From positions 62,001-126,000 of the forward strand of contig MCFH01000001.1 in assembly GCA_002104945.1 (NCBI GenBank): 64,000 nucleotides of DNA, given 5' to 3'. This stretch comes from Piromyces finnis finn. Its lineage: Eukaryota > Fungi > Neocallimastigomycota. Below, in pieces: positions 13,996-64,000 of the stretch; position 1 is the first letter of the stretch, and the number at the start of each line of letters is the position of its first letter. Under the pieces are notes generated by a model, which was not told the origin of the DNA, made no database searches, and saw only the letters and a list, made by a program, of their open reading frames with translations. The translations under genes and the position numbers were made by a program.

Positions 13996-14449
13996 TATGT
14001 GATTAATATGTGATAATAAATTAAATAGTTTAATACAAATAATTTCTTTTAATAAATGTATAAATGTAAACAATGTAAAATTATAATATTAAAACATGTA
14101 TATTTAGATTATTTATTATAAAATAAATCTAATTTTGTAATAATTATTATATATTTATAATAATTATTATCTACTATGTAATAATACAATATGTAATATG
14201 TATTATTAAATTGAGAAGTTTCTTAAAAGTAAATAAAATGAATTTAACTTAAAGAGTTTATTATAAGTGAATTATAATATACAACACAAAATATTAAGAA
14301 TATTTTTAGTTTAAATATTTTTATAAATATAGTTTTTGAAAGGGTTATTTATTATAATTGTCTTAAAATAATAACTCTGGATTCTTTAGTGGTATTCCAG
14401 AGTTCTTATATTTATAATTTTTTAATAATTTAAAGTTTAATAAAGAATT

Positions 14450-14587
14450 TCTAATCTTAACAAACAATCTTTTTAGGAAAAGACTAGAAGAAAAACCTAA
14501 AAAGATATTCGATTGATAACTAATATATCAATCATCGTAATATTAAGTAAAACCGAAATATATTTCGGAAAAACCTTAATATCCGAT
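14450..14587 (-). ncRNA. Structured cis-RNA module, copy 1: ENE-like hairpin, short hairpin and H-type pseudoknot
   Basis: Minus strand: ATATTAAG-G-UUUUU-CCGAAA-tata-TTTCGG-UUUU-A-CTTAATAT. Plus-strand pairings are TCTTTTTAGG/CCTAAAAAGA and TCTAATCTT/AAGACTAGA, interleaved. Confidence 0.7.
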
Positions 14588-14855
14588 TTTCCTAATAACT
14601 TTCTAATTGTTTCTTAAATTTCTTTTAAAATAAAATGTAAAATAAAATGCGCAACAATTACATACATATAAAATTAATAAAAAATGAAATATATAATGTT
14701 TCCTTAAAATGTACAAATAAATGTAATTAAAAATTATTACTTAACAGATATAAATGAATATTTACTATTATTTTAAATAAATTACTAAATTAAATAAATA
14801 AATAATTAGTATAATAATTAAATAAATTTTTTAAAATTAAATAAATGAATAATAC

Positions 14856-21085: not shown

Positions 21086-21677
21086 TGTTAAAATGAGATA
21101 GTTATAAGGAAACTATTTATTAAAATAAAGAAAAATATACTTATCGAGTTTATTATAAGAGCCTACAATAAATAACACTCGGATTAGGTTTTAATATTTT
21201 TTATTATAAAGGTGATTTATTAGTATTAAAAGTGTATAAGTTTTTTTTATGTTAATTTATTATAAGAAATTATAATAATAACTCTTGATTTTCAAATGAA
21301 ACTAAAGAGGTCTTTTTATATAAAAATTTAAAGAATAAAAGAATTTTATATAAAAATTTAAAGAATAAAAGAAAGTTCTAATCTTAATAAATTTCTTTTC
21401 TAGAAAAAGATTAGATGAAAAAACTAGAAAAGTTTCGATTGATAATCTATTCTTATCAATCATCGTATTATTAGATAAAACCGAATGGATTCGGGAAAAT
21501 TCTAATAATCGATTTTTTCTAAATACAATAATTTACATTACATTTAAAATACATTATGCATTATAATAAAATTTAATAAAATTTAATAAAATATTAAAGG
21601 TTAAATAAAAAAGATAATAAATTAATTTTAATAAGAAATATTGATTATTTATTATAAAATAAATCTAATTTCTTACA
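21086..21677 (-). mobile_element. Family-F-like LTR remnant carrying copy 2 of the structured module
   Basis: Its terminus TCTAATTTCTTACA (21664-21677) and the nearby TAATAAGAAATAT match the F LTR terminus at 59635. The left boundary is uncertain. Confidence 0.6.
21377..21513 (-). ncRNA. Structured cis-RNA module, copy 2
   Basis: Minus strand: ATTATTAGA-A-UUUUC-CCGAAT-cc-ATTCGG-UUUU-A-TCTAATAAT. Pseudoknot pairings are TCTAATCTT/AAGATTAGA and CTTTTCTAG/CTAGAAAAG. Confidence 0.7.
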
Positions 21678-58956: not shown

Positions 58957-59635
58957 TGTAAGAATTTAATATATAACTTTAATTATATATGTACATTCTT
59001 AACTACAATGTAATAATACACTGTAAGTAATATAATAATATAACTATATTCACAAAATAATTAATACGTATCTTTAATGTTTTGTTTTATTCTTATTTTA
59101 AATTATTGAATAATTTTTTTTTAAAAAATTTTTATTAAAACTTCTCTTAATAAGTTTTGAGTTTATTTTTTCTTACTAAGAAAAAATAATAACTCTTGAA
59201 TTTTTTAATTAAATTCAGGAGTTGTTTTATTTATAAGAATTTTAAAATTTTGGGTTAAATTAAAGAATTTTCTAGTCTAACAAATAAATCTTCTAGGGAA
59301 AGACTAGATAAGAAAACCCTAGAAGAATTTCGATTAATAATCTATTCTTATTAATCACCGAATAATTAAATCAAAACCTATTTGTGATAGGAAAAATATT
59401 TAATATCCGGTTCCTATCAATTTTACTTTAATTTTAATTTAGATAATAAAATAAACTAAGTAATTAAATAAAATGTTTAATATAATTAAACTAAAACTAC
59501 AATTTAATTTACATTACAAATATTACATAATAAGTATTGTTACATTTATAAAATATTAATAAAATAAAACATGAAAAATGTATACATTTTAATAAGAAAT
59601 ATAGAATTACTTAAGTTTAATTCTAATTTCTTACA
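58957..59635 (-). mobile_element. 3' LTR of gypsy family F (about 679 bp)
   Basis: It starts TGTAAGAAATT right after the purine tract AGAAGAGGCAA at the end of the integrase ORF. An 8-bp terminal inverted repeat TGTAAGAA lies at 58957, but this left end is less certain. Confidence 0.7.
59271..59411 (-). ncRNA. Structured cis-RNA module, copy 3, inside the F LTR (U3)
   Basis: Minus strand: ACCG...ATTAAAT-A-UUUUU-CCTAT-cacaa-ATAGG-UUUU-G-ATTTAAT...CGGT. Pseudoknot pairings are TCTTCTAGGG/CCCTAGAAGA and TCTAGTCT/AGACTAGA. Confidence 0.75.
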
Positions 59636-60585
59636 TTGCCTCTTCTGATGAGTCAATTAGATCCGAATTTCTTTCTATGTATGGTTCTAGCTGAGAAATA
59701 TGGAAAATTGGGTGAAGATGTAAATTCTCTGAAAGATCTAATTTATAATTAAGTCTTGCTCGTACTTCTGCGATTCTGAATGGTCCTAGGAATTGATTAG
59801 AAAGTTTCTTGGCTGGTTCATTTGTAAAATAATATCTTCTTACCCATACTTTGTCATTAACAGCAAATTTGGGTCCGAGTGATTTTCTCTTGTCTCCATA
59901 CTTCTTGTAGTCACTTTTTGCTTTTATTAAATGCTCCTTCAATGCTTCAAAATGTGAGTGCCAGTCTCTTGTAAGGACAGATGCACTATCCTTAAGAAGA
60001 ACAGGTGGGTCACTGATATTGCATGATGGGTTAAAACCATAATTTGCGAAGTATGGTGACTTACCGATTGACTTATGCATAGCGTTATTGTAAGCCATTT
60101 CGCATAGAGGAAGATAAAAGCACCAGTCAGTCTGAGCAGAAGAACAGTAGCATCTAAGGTATTGTTCGATTACAGAGTTTGCTCTTTCCACCTGCCCATT
60201 AGATTGTTGGTGGTGAGCAGTAGCTAATTGAGGTTGAACAGAGAGAGCATAACATAGTGAAGTCCAGAATTCTGAAGAAAACTGGGAACCATGGTCAGAA
60301 ACTATTATCTTCGGGAGACCATGGTAACGGAACACATTGGCCAAAAGAAGTCTTGCAGTCAGATCGGCAGTAGGGACATCAGTACAAGGAATTAAATGTA
60401 CCATTTTAGTCAAATGGTCAGATACCACCATAATGCAGGTGCAATTTTGGGAACTTGGAAGATATACTATGAAATCTACACCTATAATTTCCCAAGGACG
60501 ATTTGGGACAGGTAATGGGATTAACTTACCGTAAGGTTGGTGTCTTCTTGTTTTGCATTTCGAACAGACTTCACAAGAAAGAACG
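59631..60585 (-). pseudogene. Family-F integrase (no chromodomain), interrupted at 60585 by the A3 insertion
   Basis: CEVCSKCKTRRHQPYG, IVSDHGSQF, QSNGQVER and LGPF...HPIFHISQLEPY. Confidence 0.9.
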
Positions 60586-63500
60586 TGTAATGTTGGACAC
60601 TGGAAGAATAGATTAGGATATCTATTCTATTACAATAACACTAAAATTTGAAATAAAAAAAATTGTTTTTATAAAAATATCTTTTATTATAATAGAAATT
60701 TTATTAATAACAATTACATCGATCAAAATGATGAAAAATATCTTCTATTTATATTTTTCCTAAATACATTTATATTATATTATAACTATTTATTTCTTAT
60801 ATATTATTATTTAAAATCTACATTAAAATCTTAATTGTTAATAAATATTTAAACTATAACTATTTTTAGTAAAATACAATTGGCAATTCAAATTAAGTAC
60901 CATTCAATTTGAATATGTGCCCATGTATTATTGATATATTAATCATTTATTATTTATATATTATTTATCTATTTCTATGAAAAAACAATACTAAAACTAG
61001 GGATTTAAATTGAGAATTTTAATTTACTTGTTAAACATTAAAAATAAATTAATAATTTATTTTGTTTTAAACTTTAATTATTAATAAATAAATTATGTCT
61101 CATTTTCTTTTTCTGAATAATTTGTGTAACTTAAACAATAATACTTATGGCTAAAGTTACATTAAAGATATCAAGTTGAGGCGTTTGATATCTTTACAAT
61201 CTCTCTCTCTAAGTCGAGCTCCTGCGAGATTAATTTATAGGGAATTTTTTCTCGAAGGAATTTCAATTACAAATGGTTGGTATCTGTGCTTGATTAGATT
61301 GCCAACTTTATTCTTTCTAATTTTCATGGAGGAGTCGCTCGACTTATGTTTTGACTTTTTAGAGTTTCTTTCAAACTCTTGTATTAATTGTTTATCTGGA
61401 ATCTGATCTTCAGAAATCCAAGTGGATTTGTCAAATCCTTTCCATGATAACTTATAAAATGTTTCACCATTAACAGATTTCATCTTCTCAAATTTCTCTG
61501 TTATTTTTTCAATCAAATCTGTGTTAAGGTGAATGTTCCTCTTCCTACGATTAGACCTGTCGTTAAACTCGTTTTCAAAGTATGGTTCTAACAATGAGAC
61601 ATGAAAGACTGGATGACATCTCATTGTCTTTGGAAGTTTCAATTTGAAAGCGAGAGAACTAACTTTTTCAATTATCTCAAATGGGCCAAGCATTTGAGGT
61701 GCTAATTTTTTCTTTAAGTTAGTTCCAGGAGAATCTTTCAATAACCATACTTTCTTTCCCACTTCGAACTCCGGGGGACTCATTCTTTTCATATCGGCAT
61801 ATTTCTTATATGTTTCTTTTGCTTTTTCTAAGTTTTCTTTTAATAATTTAAAGTTTTCATTCATATCAATTACTCTTTGTTCAGCTCTACTAGGTCTATC
61901 ATTAGCTGGAATTTCTAAGCTGAACTTTGGATGAAAACCATAATTAGCAAAGAATGGGGATTGATTTATAGATTGCTGTAAAGTATTATTATATGCAAAT
62001 TCAGCAAATGGGATAAGATCAACCCAGTTATTCTGCTTTTTATTTATAAAACAACGGAAATATTGTTCTAATATGCCGTTCACCCTCTCCGTTTGACCAT
62101 CTGTCTGCGGATGGTTAGCAGTCGATAATGAATGATTAATATTAAGAAGGTCACAAAGTCTTAACCAAAAATCAGAAGTAAATTGCGAGCCTCTATCAGA
62201 GATGATGGAATCAGGAAGACCATGCAAACGGAAGACATTAGCAATAAAAACATCAGCAGCAATCGAAACGGTAGGAAGACAACGTAAAGGAATAGCGTGA
62301 GCAAATTTAGTAAATCTATCGACAACAACCATAAGAGTTGTCATATCTCTGGACTTAGGAAGATCAACAATAAAATCAATAGAAATATCAGACCAGGGCC
62401 TACTGGGAGTGTCCAAAGGGGATAACAATCCATAAGGCTTATATCTGGGGACTTTGGATTTGCAACAAGTCACGCAAGATTTGATAAAAGATTTAACGTC
62501 TGAATGAAATCTTGGCCACCAAAAGTTTCTGGAAATCATTTCAGTGGTTTTCTTAATACCGAAATGACCAGCAGCAACAGAATCATGATGAAGCTCCAAA
62601 ATTCTTGTCCTAAGAGATTTAGGAACATAAATAAGATTATTATATAACAAAAATCCTTCATCATCAAAAATAACTTTATCAATATTTTTAATAGGTGCAT
62701 TTCCTGTAGAATCATTCATTTTAAATTTGACAATGGAATTATACAAATCATCATTTTTAAGTTCTAATAAAATAGAATCGATTAACGGTTTGTTATCGCT
62801 ATGATGGAGCGAAATAGAAAGACAAGAAACATCAGGATTAATAACATTCACTAAATGATCACTTCTACGAGACAGGATATCAGGCTTACCTGATTTCTTT
62901 CCAGCTCTATAAATGAGTTTAAAATCAAATCTGGATAAGAACAAATTCCATCTAATTTGTCTCTGAGATAACATTTCAGGTTTTCTAGGAAATGTTAAAT
63001 TCTTGTGATCAGTATAAATTATGAACGGATGGCGTGCACCTTCTAAATAATGACGCCATTCTTCAAGTACAACTACAATAGCTAAAAGTTCCTCGTCATA
63101 TATAGGATAGTTTCTTTGACAGCTTGTCAAACTTTTAGAAAGAAATGCAATAGGATGTAATTTGCCATCAAACTCTTGAGAGAGAATAGCACCGACAGCA
63201 TAGTTACTAGCATCAGTTTCTACAATAAATTGTTTATTACTATCCGCATGTTTCAGAATAGGAGCTGACGTGAACAAAGTTTTTAATAAAATAAAAGCGT
63301 CCTGATCTTCTTTCACCCAGTTAAAAGCAACATTCTTTCTAGTGAGTTTGTGAAGAGGGTTTGCAACTTTAGCAAAGTCTTTAATAAAAATTCTGTAGTA
63401 GTTGCATAAACCAATAAAAGACTGAACCTCTTTAACATTCTTGGGAACCGGCCAATCGAGAATTGCTTTAACTTTATTCTCATCCATTTGCAACCCATCT

Positions 63501-64000
63501 TTTGAAATGACATAACCAAGAAAAGTGGTTTTCTTAACATCAAACTCACATTTTTCTAATTTAACATAAAGATTATTTTCAAGTAGTTTCTTAAGTACCT
63601 TTTTAACATGCACATGATGTTCTTCGATATTATTAGAATAAATAAGAATATCATCAATATATGAGATAACAAAATCATCTAAATAATCACTAAGGACATC
63701 GTTAATGAAGTGTTGAAAAGTTGCAGATGCATTTTTTCAATCCAAAAGGCATAACTAGATATTCAAAATGACCATATCTAGTACGAAAAGCCGTTTTGTA
63801 TTCATCACCTTCTTTAATACGAACAAGATTATAAGCGGATTTAAGGTCTAATTTAGTAAAAATCTTAGCATTTTTCACCCTATCCATAAGGTCACTTATT
63901 AAGGGTAAAGGATATGAATTACGAATTGTAATATCATTCAACTTTCTATATTCGATACAAAGTCTTAGGGAGCCATCATTCTTTTTAACAAATAAAATTG
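60586..64000 (-). mobile_element. Family-A copy 'A3' (3' LTR 60586-61198, pol 61235 to the window end), RT frameshifted
   Basis: Reverse complement of about 47570-50952. ORF 61235-63613 is intact from late RT to the C-terminus; a +1 frameshift lies near 63735. Confidence 0.95.

What the first reader, a model, noticed from the sequence alone, without database searches (positions are those of the whole stretch)
59271..59411. ENE-type poly(A)-capturing hairpin coupled to a pseudoknot inside a gypsy LTR (copy 3, in native context)
Seen in sequence: on the minus strand, about 220 nt inside the 3' LTR of gypsy F, the RNA folds into three consecutive parts. (1) A long hairpin with a two-sided U-rich internal loop (A-UUUUU / UUUU-G) closed by a CC/GG upper stem. 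(2) A 9-bp hairpin. (3) An H-type pseudoknot. Two other copies (14450-14587, 21377-21513) differ widely in sequence but keep every stem through compensatory changes. Examples: ACCG/CGGT vs ATCG/CGAT; CCTAT/ATAGG vs CCGAA/TTCGG; GATTAATAA/TTATTAATC vs GATTGATAA/TTATCAATC; TCTTCTAGGG/CCCTAGAAGA vs TCTTTTTAGG/CCTAAAAAGA vs CTTTTCTAG/CTAGAAAAG. Established: this internal-loop layout is that of ENEs (KSHV PAN, MALAT1, and ENEs reported in plant and fungal transposon RNAs), which bind the poly(A) tail as a U.A-U triple helix and block decay. Inference: this LTR family carries a composite 3'-end stability device in U3. I do not recognise the ENE + hairpin + pseudoknot combination as described, but I could not search for it.
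Basis: partly seen in the sequence, partly recalled or inferred. Interest (0 to 1): 0.85.

Follow-up and report, generated by a model that had tools for sequence, protein, structure and literature searches.

The report
Folded RNA module in retrotransposon LTR
A 141-base stretch in the terminal repeat of a fungal jumping gene folds into a hairpin with facing U-tracts, a second hairpin and a pseudoknot; relatives keep this fold through many matched base changes, and it probably guards or shapes the RNA's tail end, which is untested.

Summary
There is a hairpin H1 with an internal loop A-UUUUU / UUUU-G under a CC/GG stem, then a 9-bp hairpin H2, then an H-type pseudoknot (S1 plus S2).

The fold is real and selected. 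At least 150 genome copies score above 100 bits. About 13 diverged families, five from other samples, keep 91% of pairs, and 24 of 37 nested pairs change on both sides. The pseudoknot helix S2 also covaries at 3 positions.

The module lies in U3. It sits 223 nt into the LTR, upstream of TATAAATA and of a 12-nt stretch complementary to the primer-binding site (Tf1-like self-priming). It is therefore carried once, near the 3' end of the element's RNA.

H1 has the layout of a single-domain ENE. However, its 3' tract has only four U, its lower flank is weak in G-C, it matches no Rfam family, and no poly(A) site or oligo(A) binding could be tested. S1 plus S2 also occur without H1 in two relatives, so the pseudoknot is not just an ENE accessory.

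ENEs inside plant and fungal LTRs are already published. The H2 and pseudoknot coupling appears undescribed. The scan had already noted this module on other DNA of this genome (s1-185384).

The parts
58957..59635 (-). 3' LTR of the family-A gypsy copy (679 bp, TG...CA). The copy itself is truncated: only the last ~950 nt of pol (to about 60586) plus this LTR are present.
   Evidence: The LTR start TGTAAGAAATTAGA is shared by copies with unrelated flanks. BLAST against the full element L031 matches window 60586-58957 at 98%.
59636..59646 (-). Polypurine tract AGAAGAGGCAA, directly 5' of the LTR.
   Evidence: Its role as the plus-strand primer is inferred from its position and composition.
59357..59411 (-). 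H1, the ENE-like hairpin. It has a 14-bp lower stem, an internal loop A-UUUUU (U5 at 59396-59392) / UUUU-G (U4 at 59376-59373), an upper stem CCUAU/AUAGG and an apical loop CACAA.
   Evidence: Fold. Both the lower and upper stems covary across families, and the 3' tract GGUUUU is invariant in 13 of 15 family rows.
59332..59356 (-). H2, a 9-bp hairpin GAUUAAUAA/UUAUUAAUC with apical loop GAAUAGA.
   Evidence: Fold. Cells are 100% paired across families and 4 pairs change on both sides (helix 4).
59289..59326 (-). Pseudoknot stem S1 (UCUUCUAGGG/CCCUAGAAGA). Its 18-nt U-rich loop holds S2a (UCUAGUCU, 59308-59301).
   Evidence: Fold. Eight of the 11 S1 pairs change on both sides among 15 family representatives.
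59271..59278 (-). Pseudoknot 3' strand S2b (AGACUAGA), which pairs with the S1 loop.
   Evidence: S2 is 94.7% paired in 15 families. Changes on both sides occur at 3 positions: AU/GU/GC at one position, and UA>CG and CG>AU in L163. Duplex energy is about -10 kcal/mol, z -3 to -5.6 in 14 of 15 families.
59228..59235 (-). TATAAATA promoter box, 36 nt downstream of the module.
   Evidence: It is conserved at about the same distance in families A-F and I and in L153, L164, L169 and L174.
59186..59197 (-). AAGAGUUAUUAU, the reverse complement of the 12 nt that follow the 5' LTR (ATAATAACTCTT). This marks the likely transcript start (U3/R border) of a self-priming element.
   Evidence: Exact 12-nt complementarity in L031 and L033, also seen in L153 and L160. 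Reading it as the transcription start site relies on what I know of Tf1 self-priming.
59162..59167 (-). First AAUAAA after the inferred transcript start. It lies in the 3' arm of a U-rich/A-rich hairpin and is a candidate poly(A) signal, about 105 nt after the module's end.
   Evidence: The actual poly(A) site is not mapped.
14447..14590 (-). Copy of the whole module, family C.
   Evidence: R1 133 bits and R2 153 bits.
21374..21516 (-). Copy of the whole module, family B.
   Evidence: R1 142 bits and R2 145 bits.

Best explanation
The stretch is a conserved, structured cis-acting RNA module in the U3 region of the LTR. The LTR belongs to a self-priming (Tf1-like) Ty3/gypsy clade whose pol carries no Pfam chromodomain match, in an AT-rich genome that is probably an anaerobic gut fungus.

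Because the module is in U3, it is transcribed only from the 3' LTR. It therefore sits once per genomic RNA, about 75 nt before R and roughly 100-200 nt before the poly(A) site.

The most likely mechanism concerns H1. Its two facing U-tracts (U4-7 on the 5' side, U4 on the 3' side) lie under invariant C-G, C-G pairs and above a purine-purine mismatch. They would clamp a stretch of the poly(A) tail as a short U.A-U triple helix, as ENEs do, and so slow deadenylation and decay of the element's RNA.

H2 and the pseudoknot form an adjoining rigid fold. This fold is distributed more widely than H1 and probably has its own role at the RNA's 3' end.

Shown: the fold, its covariation, its strand, its place in U3 and its presence in other samples. 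Inferred: the transcript start, the poly(A) site, tail binding and stabilisation.
For: Fold and covariation:
- MFE -37.8 kcal/mol, z = -4.9.
- At least 150 genome matches above 100 bits. A loop-plus-pseudoknot pattern matches 140 times, with 0 for the reversed control.
- On the family-level alignment A7, 90.8% of cells are paired, and 24 of 37 pairs change on both sides against 13.0 in shuffles (0/500). Slid controls are 29-48% paired.
- On the pseudoknot alignment A6, S2 is 94.7% paired with 3 covarying positions.

Strand:
- G-U cells outnumber A-C cells 193 to 64, which points to the sense strand.

U3 position:
- TATAAATA lies 36 nt downstream of the module.
- The 12 nt after the 5' LTR are the exact reverse complement of an LTR stretch that starts 38 nt after the first base of TATAAATA.

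Conservation outside this genome:
- L153, L164-167, L168-171 and L174 carry the whole module with new stem spellings.

U-tracts:
- They stay fixed while the neighbouring stems vary.

Literature:
- An ENE is a stem-loop with a U-rich internal loop that binds the poly(A) tail (PMC7583470).
- ENEs occur in plant and fungal transposable elements, including inside LTRs (PMC13541005).
- The Evade LTR retrotransposon's ENE protects its RNA from CCR4a deadenylation (PMC12501189).
Against: - The invariant 3' tract is only four U, whereas PAN RNA forms five U.A-U triples.
- G-C pairs directly below the loop are reported as essential for triplex formation in Evade (PMC12501189). Here they are one or two in most families and absent in the window's own family A.
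- No Rfam family matches, even at E <= 10.
- The poly(A) site is not mapped. The four runs that hold the element are contigs of unknown RNA or DNA origin with no A-tails.
- In a 496-nt context the MFE fold replaces H1 with other pairings.
- L160 and L163 keep the pseudoknot without H1, so H1 is dispensable for at least some relatives.
- U-runs are cheap in a genome with about 20-30% G+C.
Confidence: 0.45

Rival explanations
1. The module is a polyadenylation enhancer specific to the 3' LTR, like an upstream sequence element. Being in U3, it lies upstream of only the 3' copy of the AAUAAA signal in R. Its U-rich loops and rigid fold would recruit or position the cleavage machinery, so the promoter-proximal signal in the 5' LTR is ignored while the 3' one is used.
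For: The inferred R is very short. AAUAAA lies only about 25-35 nt after the inferred transcript start in every family, so the element needs a way to skip the 5' copy. The module is in U3 and is U-rich. U3 upstream enhancers of this kind are known for HIV-1 (from my own knowledge).
Against: Upstream sequence elements are usually short linear U-rich motifs. They do not explain about 47 covarying base pairs and a pseudoknot. The module is also 100 nt or more from the signal.
Confidence: 0.2
2. The module is a recognition or scaffold signal for the element's own replication: Gag/nucleocapsid binding and packaging, RNA dimerisation, or help with minus-strand transfer to the 3' R. It would not be a poly(A) clamp.
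For: The module is specific to one gypsy clade. Other LTR elements in the window lack it, and a 50%-identical chromodomain-bearing relative lacks it (L176). The pseudoknot loop sequence is almost invariant. The H2 loop repeats the S2b motif GA(U/A)UAGA, as a protein-binding or kissing motif might. In Ty3, U3 takes part in a bipartite primer-binding interaction (from my own knowledge).
Against: No direct evidence exists. Packaging signals of retroelements are usually 5'-proximal. This reading does not explain the fixed facing U-tracts.
Confidence: 0.2
3. The conservation acts on DNA. The inverted repeats would be transcription-factor sites (TAATC/GATTA-like) in the LTR enhancer, 40-190 bp upstream of the TATA box.
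For: The module lies in the promoter-proximal part of U3. The motif AGATTAGAA occurs three times, in both orientations.
Against: Paired positions change together in every helix while the sequence itself is free to vary. G-U pairs outnumber A-C cells 3 to 1 on the sense strand. Factor sites would be conserved in sequence rather than in complementarity.
Confidence: 0.07

Closest known systems
Single-domain ENE (KSHV PAN RNA type), and the ENEs reported in plant and fungal transposable-element RNAs, including ones inside LTRs (Tycowski et al. 2012 and 2016, as summarised in PMC7583470 and PMC13541005)
   Same: - A stem-loop with two facing U-tracts in an internal loop.
- C-G pairs close the upper side of the loop.
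- It lies in the 3' part of a polyadenylated transposon RNA.
- It is carried by an LTR.
   Different: - The 3' tract is U4, not U5.
- The lower side of the loop is closed by a purine-purine mismatch followed by a mostly A-U stem.
- It is always followed by a second hairpin and/or a pseudoknot.
- No sequence or structure match to any Rfam model.
- Function untested.
ENE of the Arabidopsis Copia93/Evade LTR retrotransposon (PMC12501189)
   Same: An LTR retrotransposon carries a U-rich internal-loop element in the 3' untranslated part of its genomic RNA. In Evade this element shields the tail from CCR4a deadenylation and raises mobility.
   Different: [quoted passage not shown]
- Here the element is a gypsy, with a single U-loop inside U3.
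- Evade has no pseudoknot.
H-type pseudoknots with U-rich loops, such as the telomerase RNA pseudoknot (PMC7583470)
   Same: S1-L1-S2-L2-S1'-L3-S2' topology, with a U-rich L1 (UUUUUC) that would run along the major groove of S2.
   Different: The purine strand of S2 (AAGAUUAGAA) is not a homopurine A-run, so only about two U.A-U triples could form. There is no link to telomerase. Whether any triple forms was not tested.
Tf1 / sushi-type self-priming Ty3/gypsy elements
   Same: The 12 nt after the 5' LTR are complementary to the start of R, so no tRNA primer site is present. The integrase has a Tf2-1-type SH3 domain.
   Different: No U3 RNA module of this kind is known to me for Tf1. The family-A and family-B pol products examined here have no Pfam chromodomain match.

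Membership tests
ENE (element for nuclear expression; triple-helix RNA stability element) | A stem-loop with a U-rich internal loop, with U-tracts on both strands | tested here: met
   The window copy has A-UUUUU / UUUU-G. Across about 13 families the 5' side is U4-U7 and the 3' side is U4.
ENE (element for nuclear expression; triple-helix RNA stability element) | Enough U on both sides for about five U.A-U triples, as in PAN RNA | tested here: inconclusive
   The 3' tract is four U in nearly every family, so four triples at most. I could not read the published lower limit for ENEs, because Tycowski 2012 and 2016 are not held.
ENE (element for nuclear expression; triple-helix RNA stability element) | G-C pairs immediately flanking the U-rich loop (A-minor stem; essential in Evade, PMC12501189) | tested here: inconclusive
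   Upper side: the C-G, C-G pairs are near-invariant (12-14 of 15 rows). Lower side: a purine-purine mismatch, then one G-C (families C-F, I, L164, L174), two (L153, L169) or none (family A, which is the window copy).
ENE (element for nuclear expression; triple-helix RNA stability element) | Lies in the 3' part of a polyadenylated RNA, upstream of the poly(A) site | tested here: inconclusive
   The U3 position is inferred from the TATA box and the self-primer complement. The poly(A) site is not mapped, because the runs are contigs without A-tails.
ENE (element for nuclear expression; triple-helix RNA stability element) | Binds oligo/poly(A) as a triple helix and stabilises the RNA | not testable with these tools
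   This needs melting or probing with oligo(A), and reporter decay assays.
ENE (element for nuclear expression; triple-helix RNA stability element) | Match to a curated covariance model | tested here: not met
   No Rfam 15 family matches at gathering score or at E <= 10 on the window LTR or on five other family copies. I did not verify which ENE models Rfam 15 holds.
H-type pseudoknot | A hairpin loop pairs with a downstream strand, and the pairing is kept by covariation | tested here: met
   S2 is 94.7% paired in 15 families. Pair types at one position are AU 8, GC 4 and GU 3, and two further pairs change on both sides in L163. Duplex z-scores are -3 to -5.6.
Self-priming (Tf1-like) Ty3/gypsy LTR retrotransposon | The primer-binding site is complementary to the 5' end of the element's own transcript, not to a tRNA | tested here: met
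   There is an exact 12-nt complement between the post-LTR sequence and the LTR stretch that starts 38 nt after the first base of the TATA box, in L031, L033, L153 and L160. The transcript start itself is not mapped.

The most novel reading that the evidence does not exclude
The module is a new two-part poly(A)-handling architecture in which the pseudoknot is itself a split U-rich clamp. S1 ends in two G-C pairs and is followed on both strands by U-tracts (UUUUUC ... UUU) that flank S2a. The 'upper stem' of this second U-loop is therefore closed in trans by the downstream strand S2b. H1 and the pseudoknot would then be two different solutions to tail capture on one RNA, or a switch between them through the H2 loop, which repeats the S2b motif. 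The pseudoknot part would be the older one, because it occurs alone in relatives.
Probability: 0.12. Interest if true: 0.8.

Novelty: new variant of a known kind. Interest (0 to 1): 0.6.

Why it matters
If H1 clamps the tail, this adds a large, young and abundant gypsy clade of an early-branching fungal lineage to the transposons that shield their RNA from deadenylation. So far that strategy has been shown functionally for only one LTR retrotransposon, Evade.

The constant partnership with a strongly covarying pseudoknot is not part of any ENE description I could read. The pseudoknot also survives without the U-loop hairpin. It may therefore mark a second, unknown 3'-end function.

The many natural compensatory variants amount to a ready-made mutational series for probing and reporter tests.

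Tried and rejected
- **RNA evidence.** The look-up of sequencing runs gave four holders, all Logan contigs of unknown RNA or DNA origin. Laying them showed no A-tails, no starts and no ends. Two contigs stop at the same LTR position just after the first AAUAAA, but this cannot be interpreted. The poly(A) site remains unmapped.
- **Rfam.** Nothing matched at gathering score or at E <= 10.
- **Metagenome pattern scan.** It returned 42 loci, but only one (L153) is a true module. The rest are chance matches to the U-rich loop word.
- **Genome letter allowance.** The abundant family H (upper stem CCAAUU/AAUUGG, H2 GAUCAAUAU/AUGUUGAUC) is therefore known only from the 80 letters printed, and it is not in the alignments.
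- **Papers.** Tycowski 2012 and 2016 are not held. I could not check whether this fungal lineage, or a pseudoknot partner, is already in their catalogue, nor read their ENE descriptor.
- **Short contigs.** Those for P0001, P0015, P0007 and part of P0005 and P0011 end before the LTR module.
- **tRNA next to L153.** A tRNA-like stretch lies beside the L153 LTR, but ARAGORN did not call it, so I dropped it.
- **Long-context fold.** The MFE fold of 496 nt does not keep H1. I give this little weight for an AU-rich sequence, compared with the covariation.
- **DNA-level inverted repeats.** I rejected this as the main explanation because complementarity, not sequence, is what is conserved.

Full report
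**Observation**

- H1 (59411-59357) has a 14-bp lower stem with one bulged U, an internal loop A-UUUUU / UUUU-G, a 5-bp upper stem CCUAU/AUAGG and a loop CACAA.
- H2 (59356-59332) is a 9-bp hairpin.
- S1 (59326-59289) is a 10-bp stem. Eight bases of its 18-nt loop (UCUAGUCU, 59308-59301) are complementary to AGACUAGA at 59278-59271. This gives an H-type pseudoknot.
- The nested fold has -37.8 kcal/mol, z = -4.9, and no shuffle out of 200 does as well.
- The opposite strand folds less well (-30.5 kcal/mol).

**Element and position**

The window copy is the last ~950 nt of a gypsy pol plus its 3' LTR (window 60586-58957, 98% identical to the full element L031). Pfam finds an integrase core and a Tf2-1-type SH3 domain in the adjoining ORF.

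The LTR runs from 59635 to 58957.
- It starts with TGTAAG. Many copies with unrelated flanks share this start.
- A polypurine run AGAAGAGGCAA precedes it.
- The module begins 223 nt inside the LTR.
- A TATAAATA box lies 36 nt after the module.
- A stretch AAGAGUUAUUAU starts 38 nt after the first base of that box. It is the exact reverse complement of the 12 nt that follow the 5' LTR, both in full elements of this genome and in elements from other samples.

This is the arrangement of self-priming elements such as Tf1 (from my own knowledge). It places the transcript start there. The module is therefore in U3. It is absent from the 5' end of the RNA and present once near its 3' end, about 75 nt before R.

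The first AAUAAA lies about 20 nt after the inferred start, in the 3' arm of a U/A hairpin. The poly(A) site itself could not be mapped.

**Is the fold selected?**

- A covariance model built from the three window copies finds at least 150 matches above 100 bits in the 56-Mb genome. Only the best 150 of 11,118 candidates were scored.
- A loop-plus-pseudoknot pattern matches 140 times, and its reversed control matches 0 times.
- The copies fall into at least nine families (A-I) with different stem spellings.
- Related pol proteins (62-74% identical) from gut-type metagenome assemblies led to contigs of other organisms. These carry the same module with still other spellings: L153, L164-167, L168-171 and L174.

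On an alignment with roughly one sequence per family (A7, 15 rows), the counts are as follows.
- 90.8% of cells are standard pairs.
- 24 of 37 nested pairs change on both sides, against 13.0 +/- 1.7 in column shuffles (0 of 500 reach it).
- Sliding the partner columns drops pairing to 29-48%.

The larger alignment A3 gives the same picture.

For the pseudoknot, an alignment of 15 family representatives (A6) shows S2 94.7% paired.
- One position reads A-U in 8 families, G-C in 4 and G-U in 3.
- Two adjacent pairs are changed on both sides in L163 (UCAUAAUCUU/AAGAUUAUGA).
- Loop-to-tail duplex energies are about -10 kcal/mol, z -3 to -5.6, in 14 of 15 families.

G-U cells outnumber A-C cells 193 to 64, so the structure belongs to the element's sense strand. 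Controls based on shuffles do not remove shared ancestry, so these figures are strong support rather than probabilities.

**What stays fixed**

While the stems vary, the two U-tracts of H1 do not.
- The 5' side is U4-U7.
- The 3' side is U4 followed by A (G in family A, U in family G).
- The C-G, C-G pairs above the loop are near-invariant.
- Below the loop there is a purine-purine mismatch, then one or two G-C pairs in most families and none in family A.
- The pseudoknot loop UUUUUCUUCUA(G/A)UCUUUU is nearly invariant as well.

**Distribution of the parts**

- Family G has H1 and the pseudoknot but no H2.
- L160 and L163 have the pseudoknot at the same place upstream of the TATA box. No H1 or H2 is detectable there by model or by eye.
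- Other LTR elements in the window do not match. A chromodomain-bearing relative at 50% identity (L176) does not match either.

The pseudoknot is thus the most widely kept part, and H1 and H2 are additions within the clade.

**Comparison with known systems**

An ENE is a stem-loop with a U-rich internal loop. That loop binds the poly(A) tail as U.A-U triples, with A-minor contacts to the neighbouring stem (PMC7583470).
- More than 200 have been predicted, including in plant and fungal transposon RNAs and inside their LTRs (PMC7583470, PMC13541005).
- In the Arabidopsis LTR retrotransposon Evade, an ENE protects the RNA from CCR4a deadenylation and raises mobility. There the G-C pairs next to the U-tracts are essential (PMC12501189).

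H1 matches the layout and the location of an ENE. It falls short on three points.
- It has only four U on the 3' side.
- The lower flank is poor in G-C.
- No Rfam model matches.

I therefore say that it most likely works like an ENE (about 45%). I do not file it as an established member. I found no description of an ENE joined to a hairpin and a pseudoknot. However, the two primary ENE catalogue papers were not available to me.

**Rivals**

- A polyadenylation enhancer specific to the 3' LTR. This is plausible because R is very short and the AAUAAA signal sits right after the transcript start.
- A replication, packaging or strand-transfer signal. This is plausible because the module is clade-specific and the H2 loop repeats the S2b motif.
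- DNA-level factor sites. This is unlikely, because complementarity rather than sequence is what is conserved.

**Limits**

- The only public runs that hold the element are contigs of unknown RNA or DNA origin.
- Long-range MFE folding of this AU-rich RNA is unreliable.
- The scan had already reported this module on another piece of the same genome, with the same cautious reading (s1-185384).
- New in this report: the U3 assignment through self-priming, family-level and cross-sample covariation, true compensatory changes in the pseudoknot helix, and the finding that the pseudoknot occurs without the ENE-like hairpin.

Noticed in passing
window 59341-59347 (-), compared with 59271-59278 (-): The H2 apical loop (GAAUAGA, or GAUUAGA in families D and F) repeats the sequence of the pseudoknot 3' strand. 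In D and F it is perfectly complementary to S2a. In the other families it has one central mismatch. It could be an alternative kissing partner or a repeated protein-binding motif.
   Followed up: partly
L031:2284-2295 and L031:2041-2052; window 59186-59197 (-): The 12 nt after the 5' LTR are the exact complement of the inferred transcript start, as in Tf1-like self-priming. No tRNA-type primer-binding site is present. The same holds in L033, L153 and L160.
   Followed up: yes
Flanks 5' of family-A LTRs (L042-L046, L058, L059): Several independent insertions have GTATCA or GTACCA 2-4 nt before the LTR start. This could be a target-site preference or repeated nesting in one host sequence.
   Followed up: no
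L031:2083 and L031:6903: Contigs from two different public runs stop at the same LTR position, 7-12 nt after the first AAUAAA of R, without A-tails. The runs are not known to be RNA, so this cannot be interpreted.
   Followed up: partly
L031:1651 (also L037, L040): The 5' LTR of this otherwise full-length family-A element lacks the first 48 nt of the LTR that the other copies have.
   Followed up: partly
window 59160-59190 (-): R starts with a hairpin made of a U-rich arm and an A-rich arm (UUAUUUUUUCUU / AAGAAAAAAUAA). The A-rich arm holds the first AAUAAA, so the signal may be masked or presented by structure.
   Followed up: no
window 61235-63613 (-), next to 59631-60431 (-): Two ORFs in a row each carry an integrase core and an SH3 domain. 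The family-A copy is therefore truncated at about 60586 and abuts a different gypsy element.
   Followed up: partly
L153:900-960: A stretch resembling the 3' half of a tRNA (T-arm-like GGTTCGA on the other strand) lies just upstream of the LTR. ARAGORN calls no tRNA there.
   Followed up: partly
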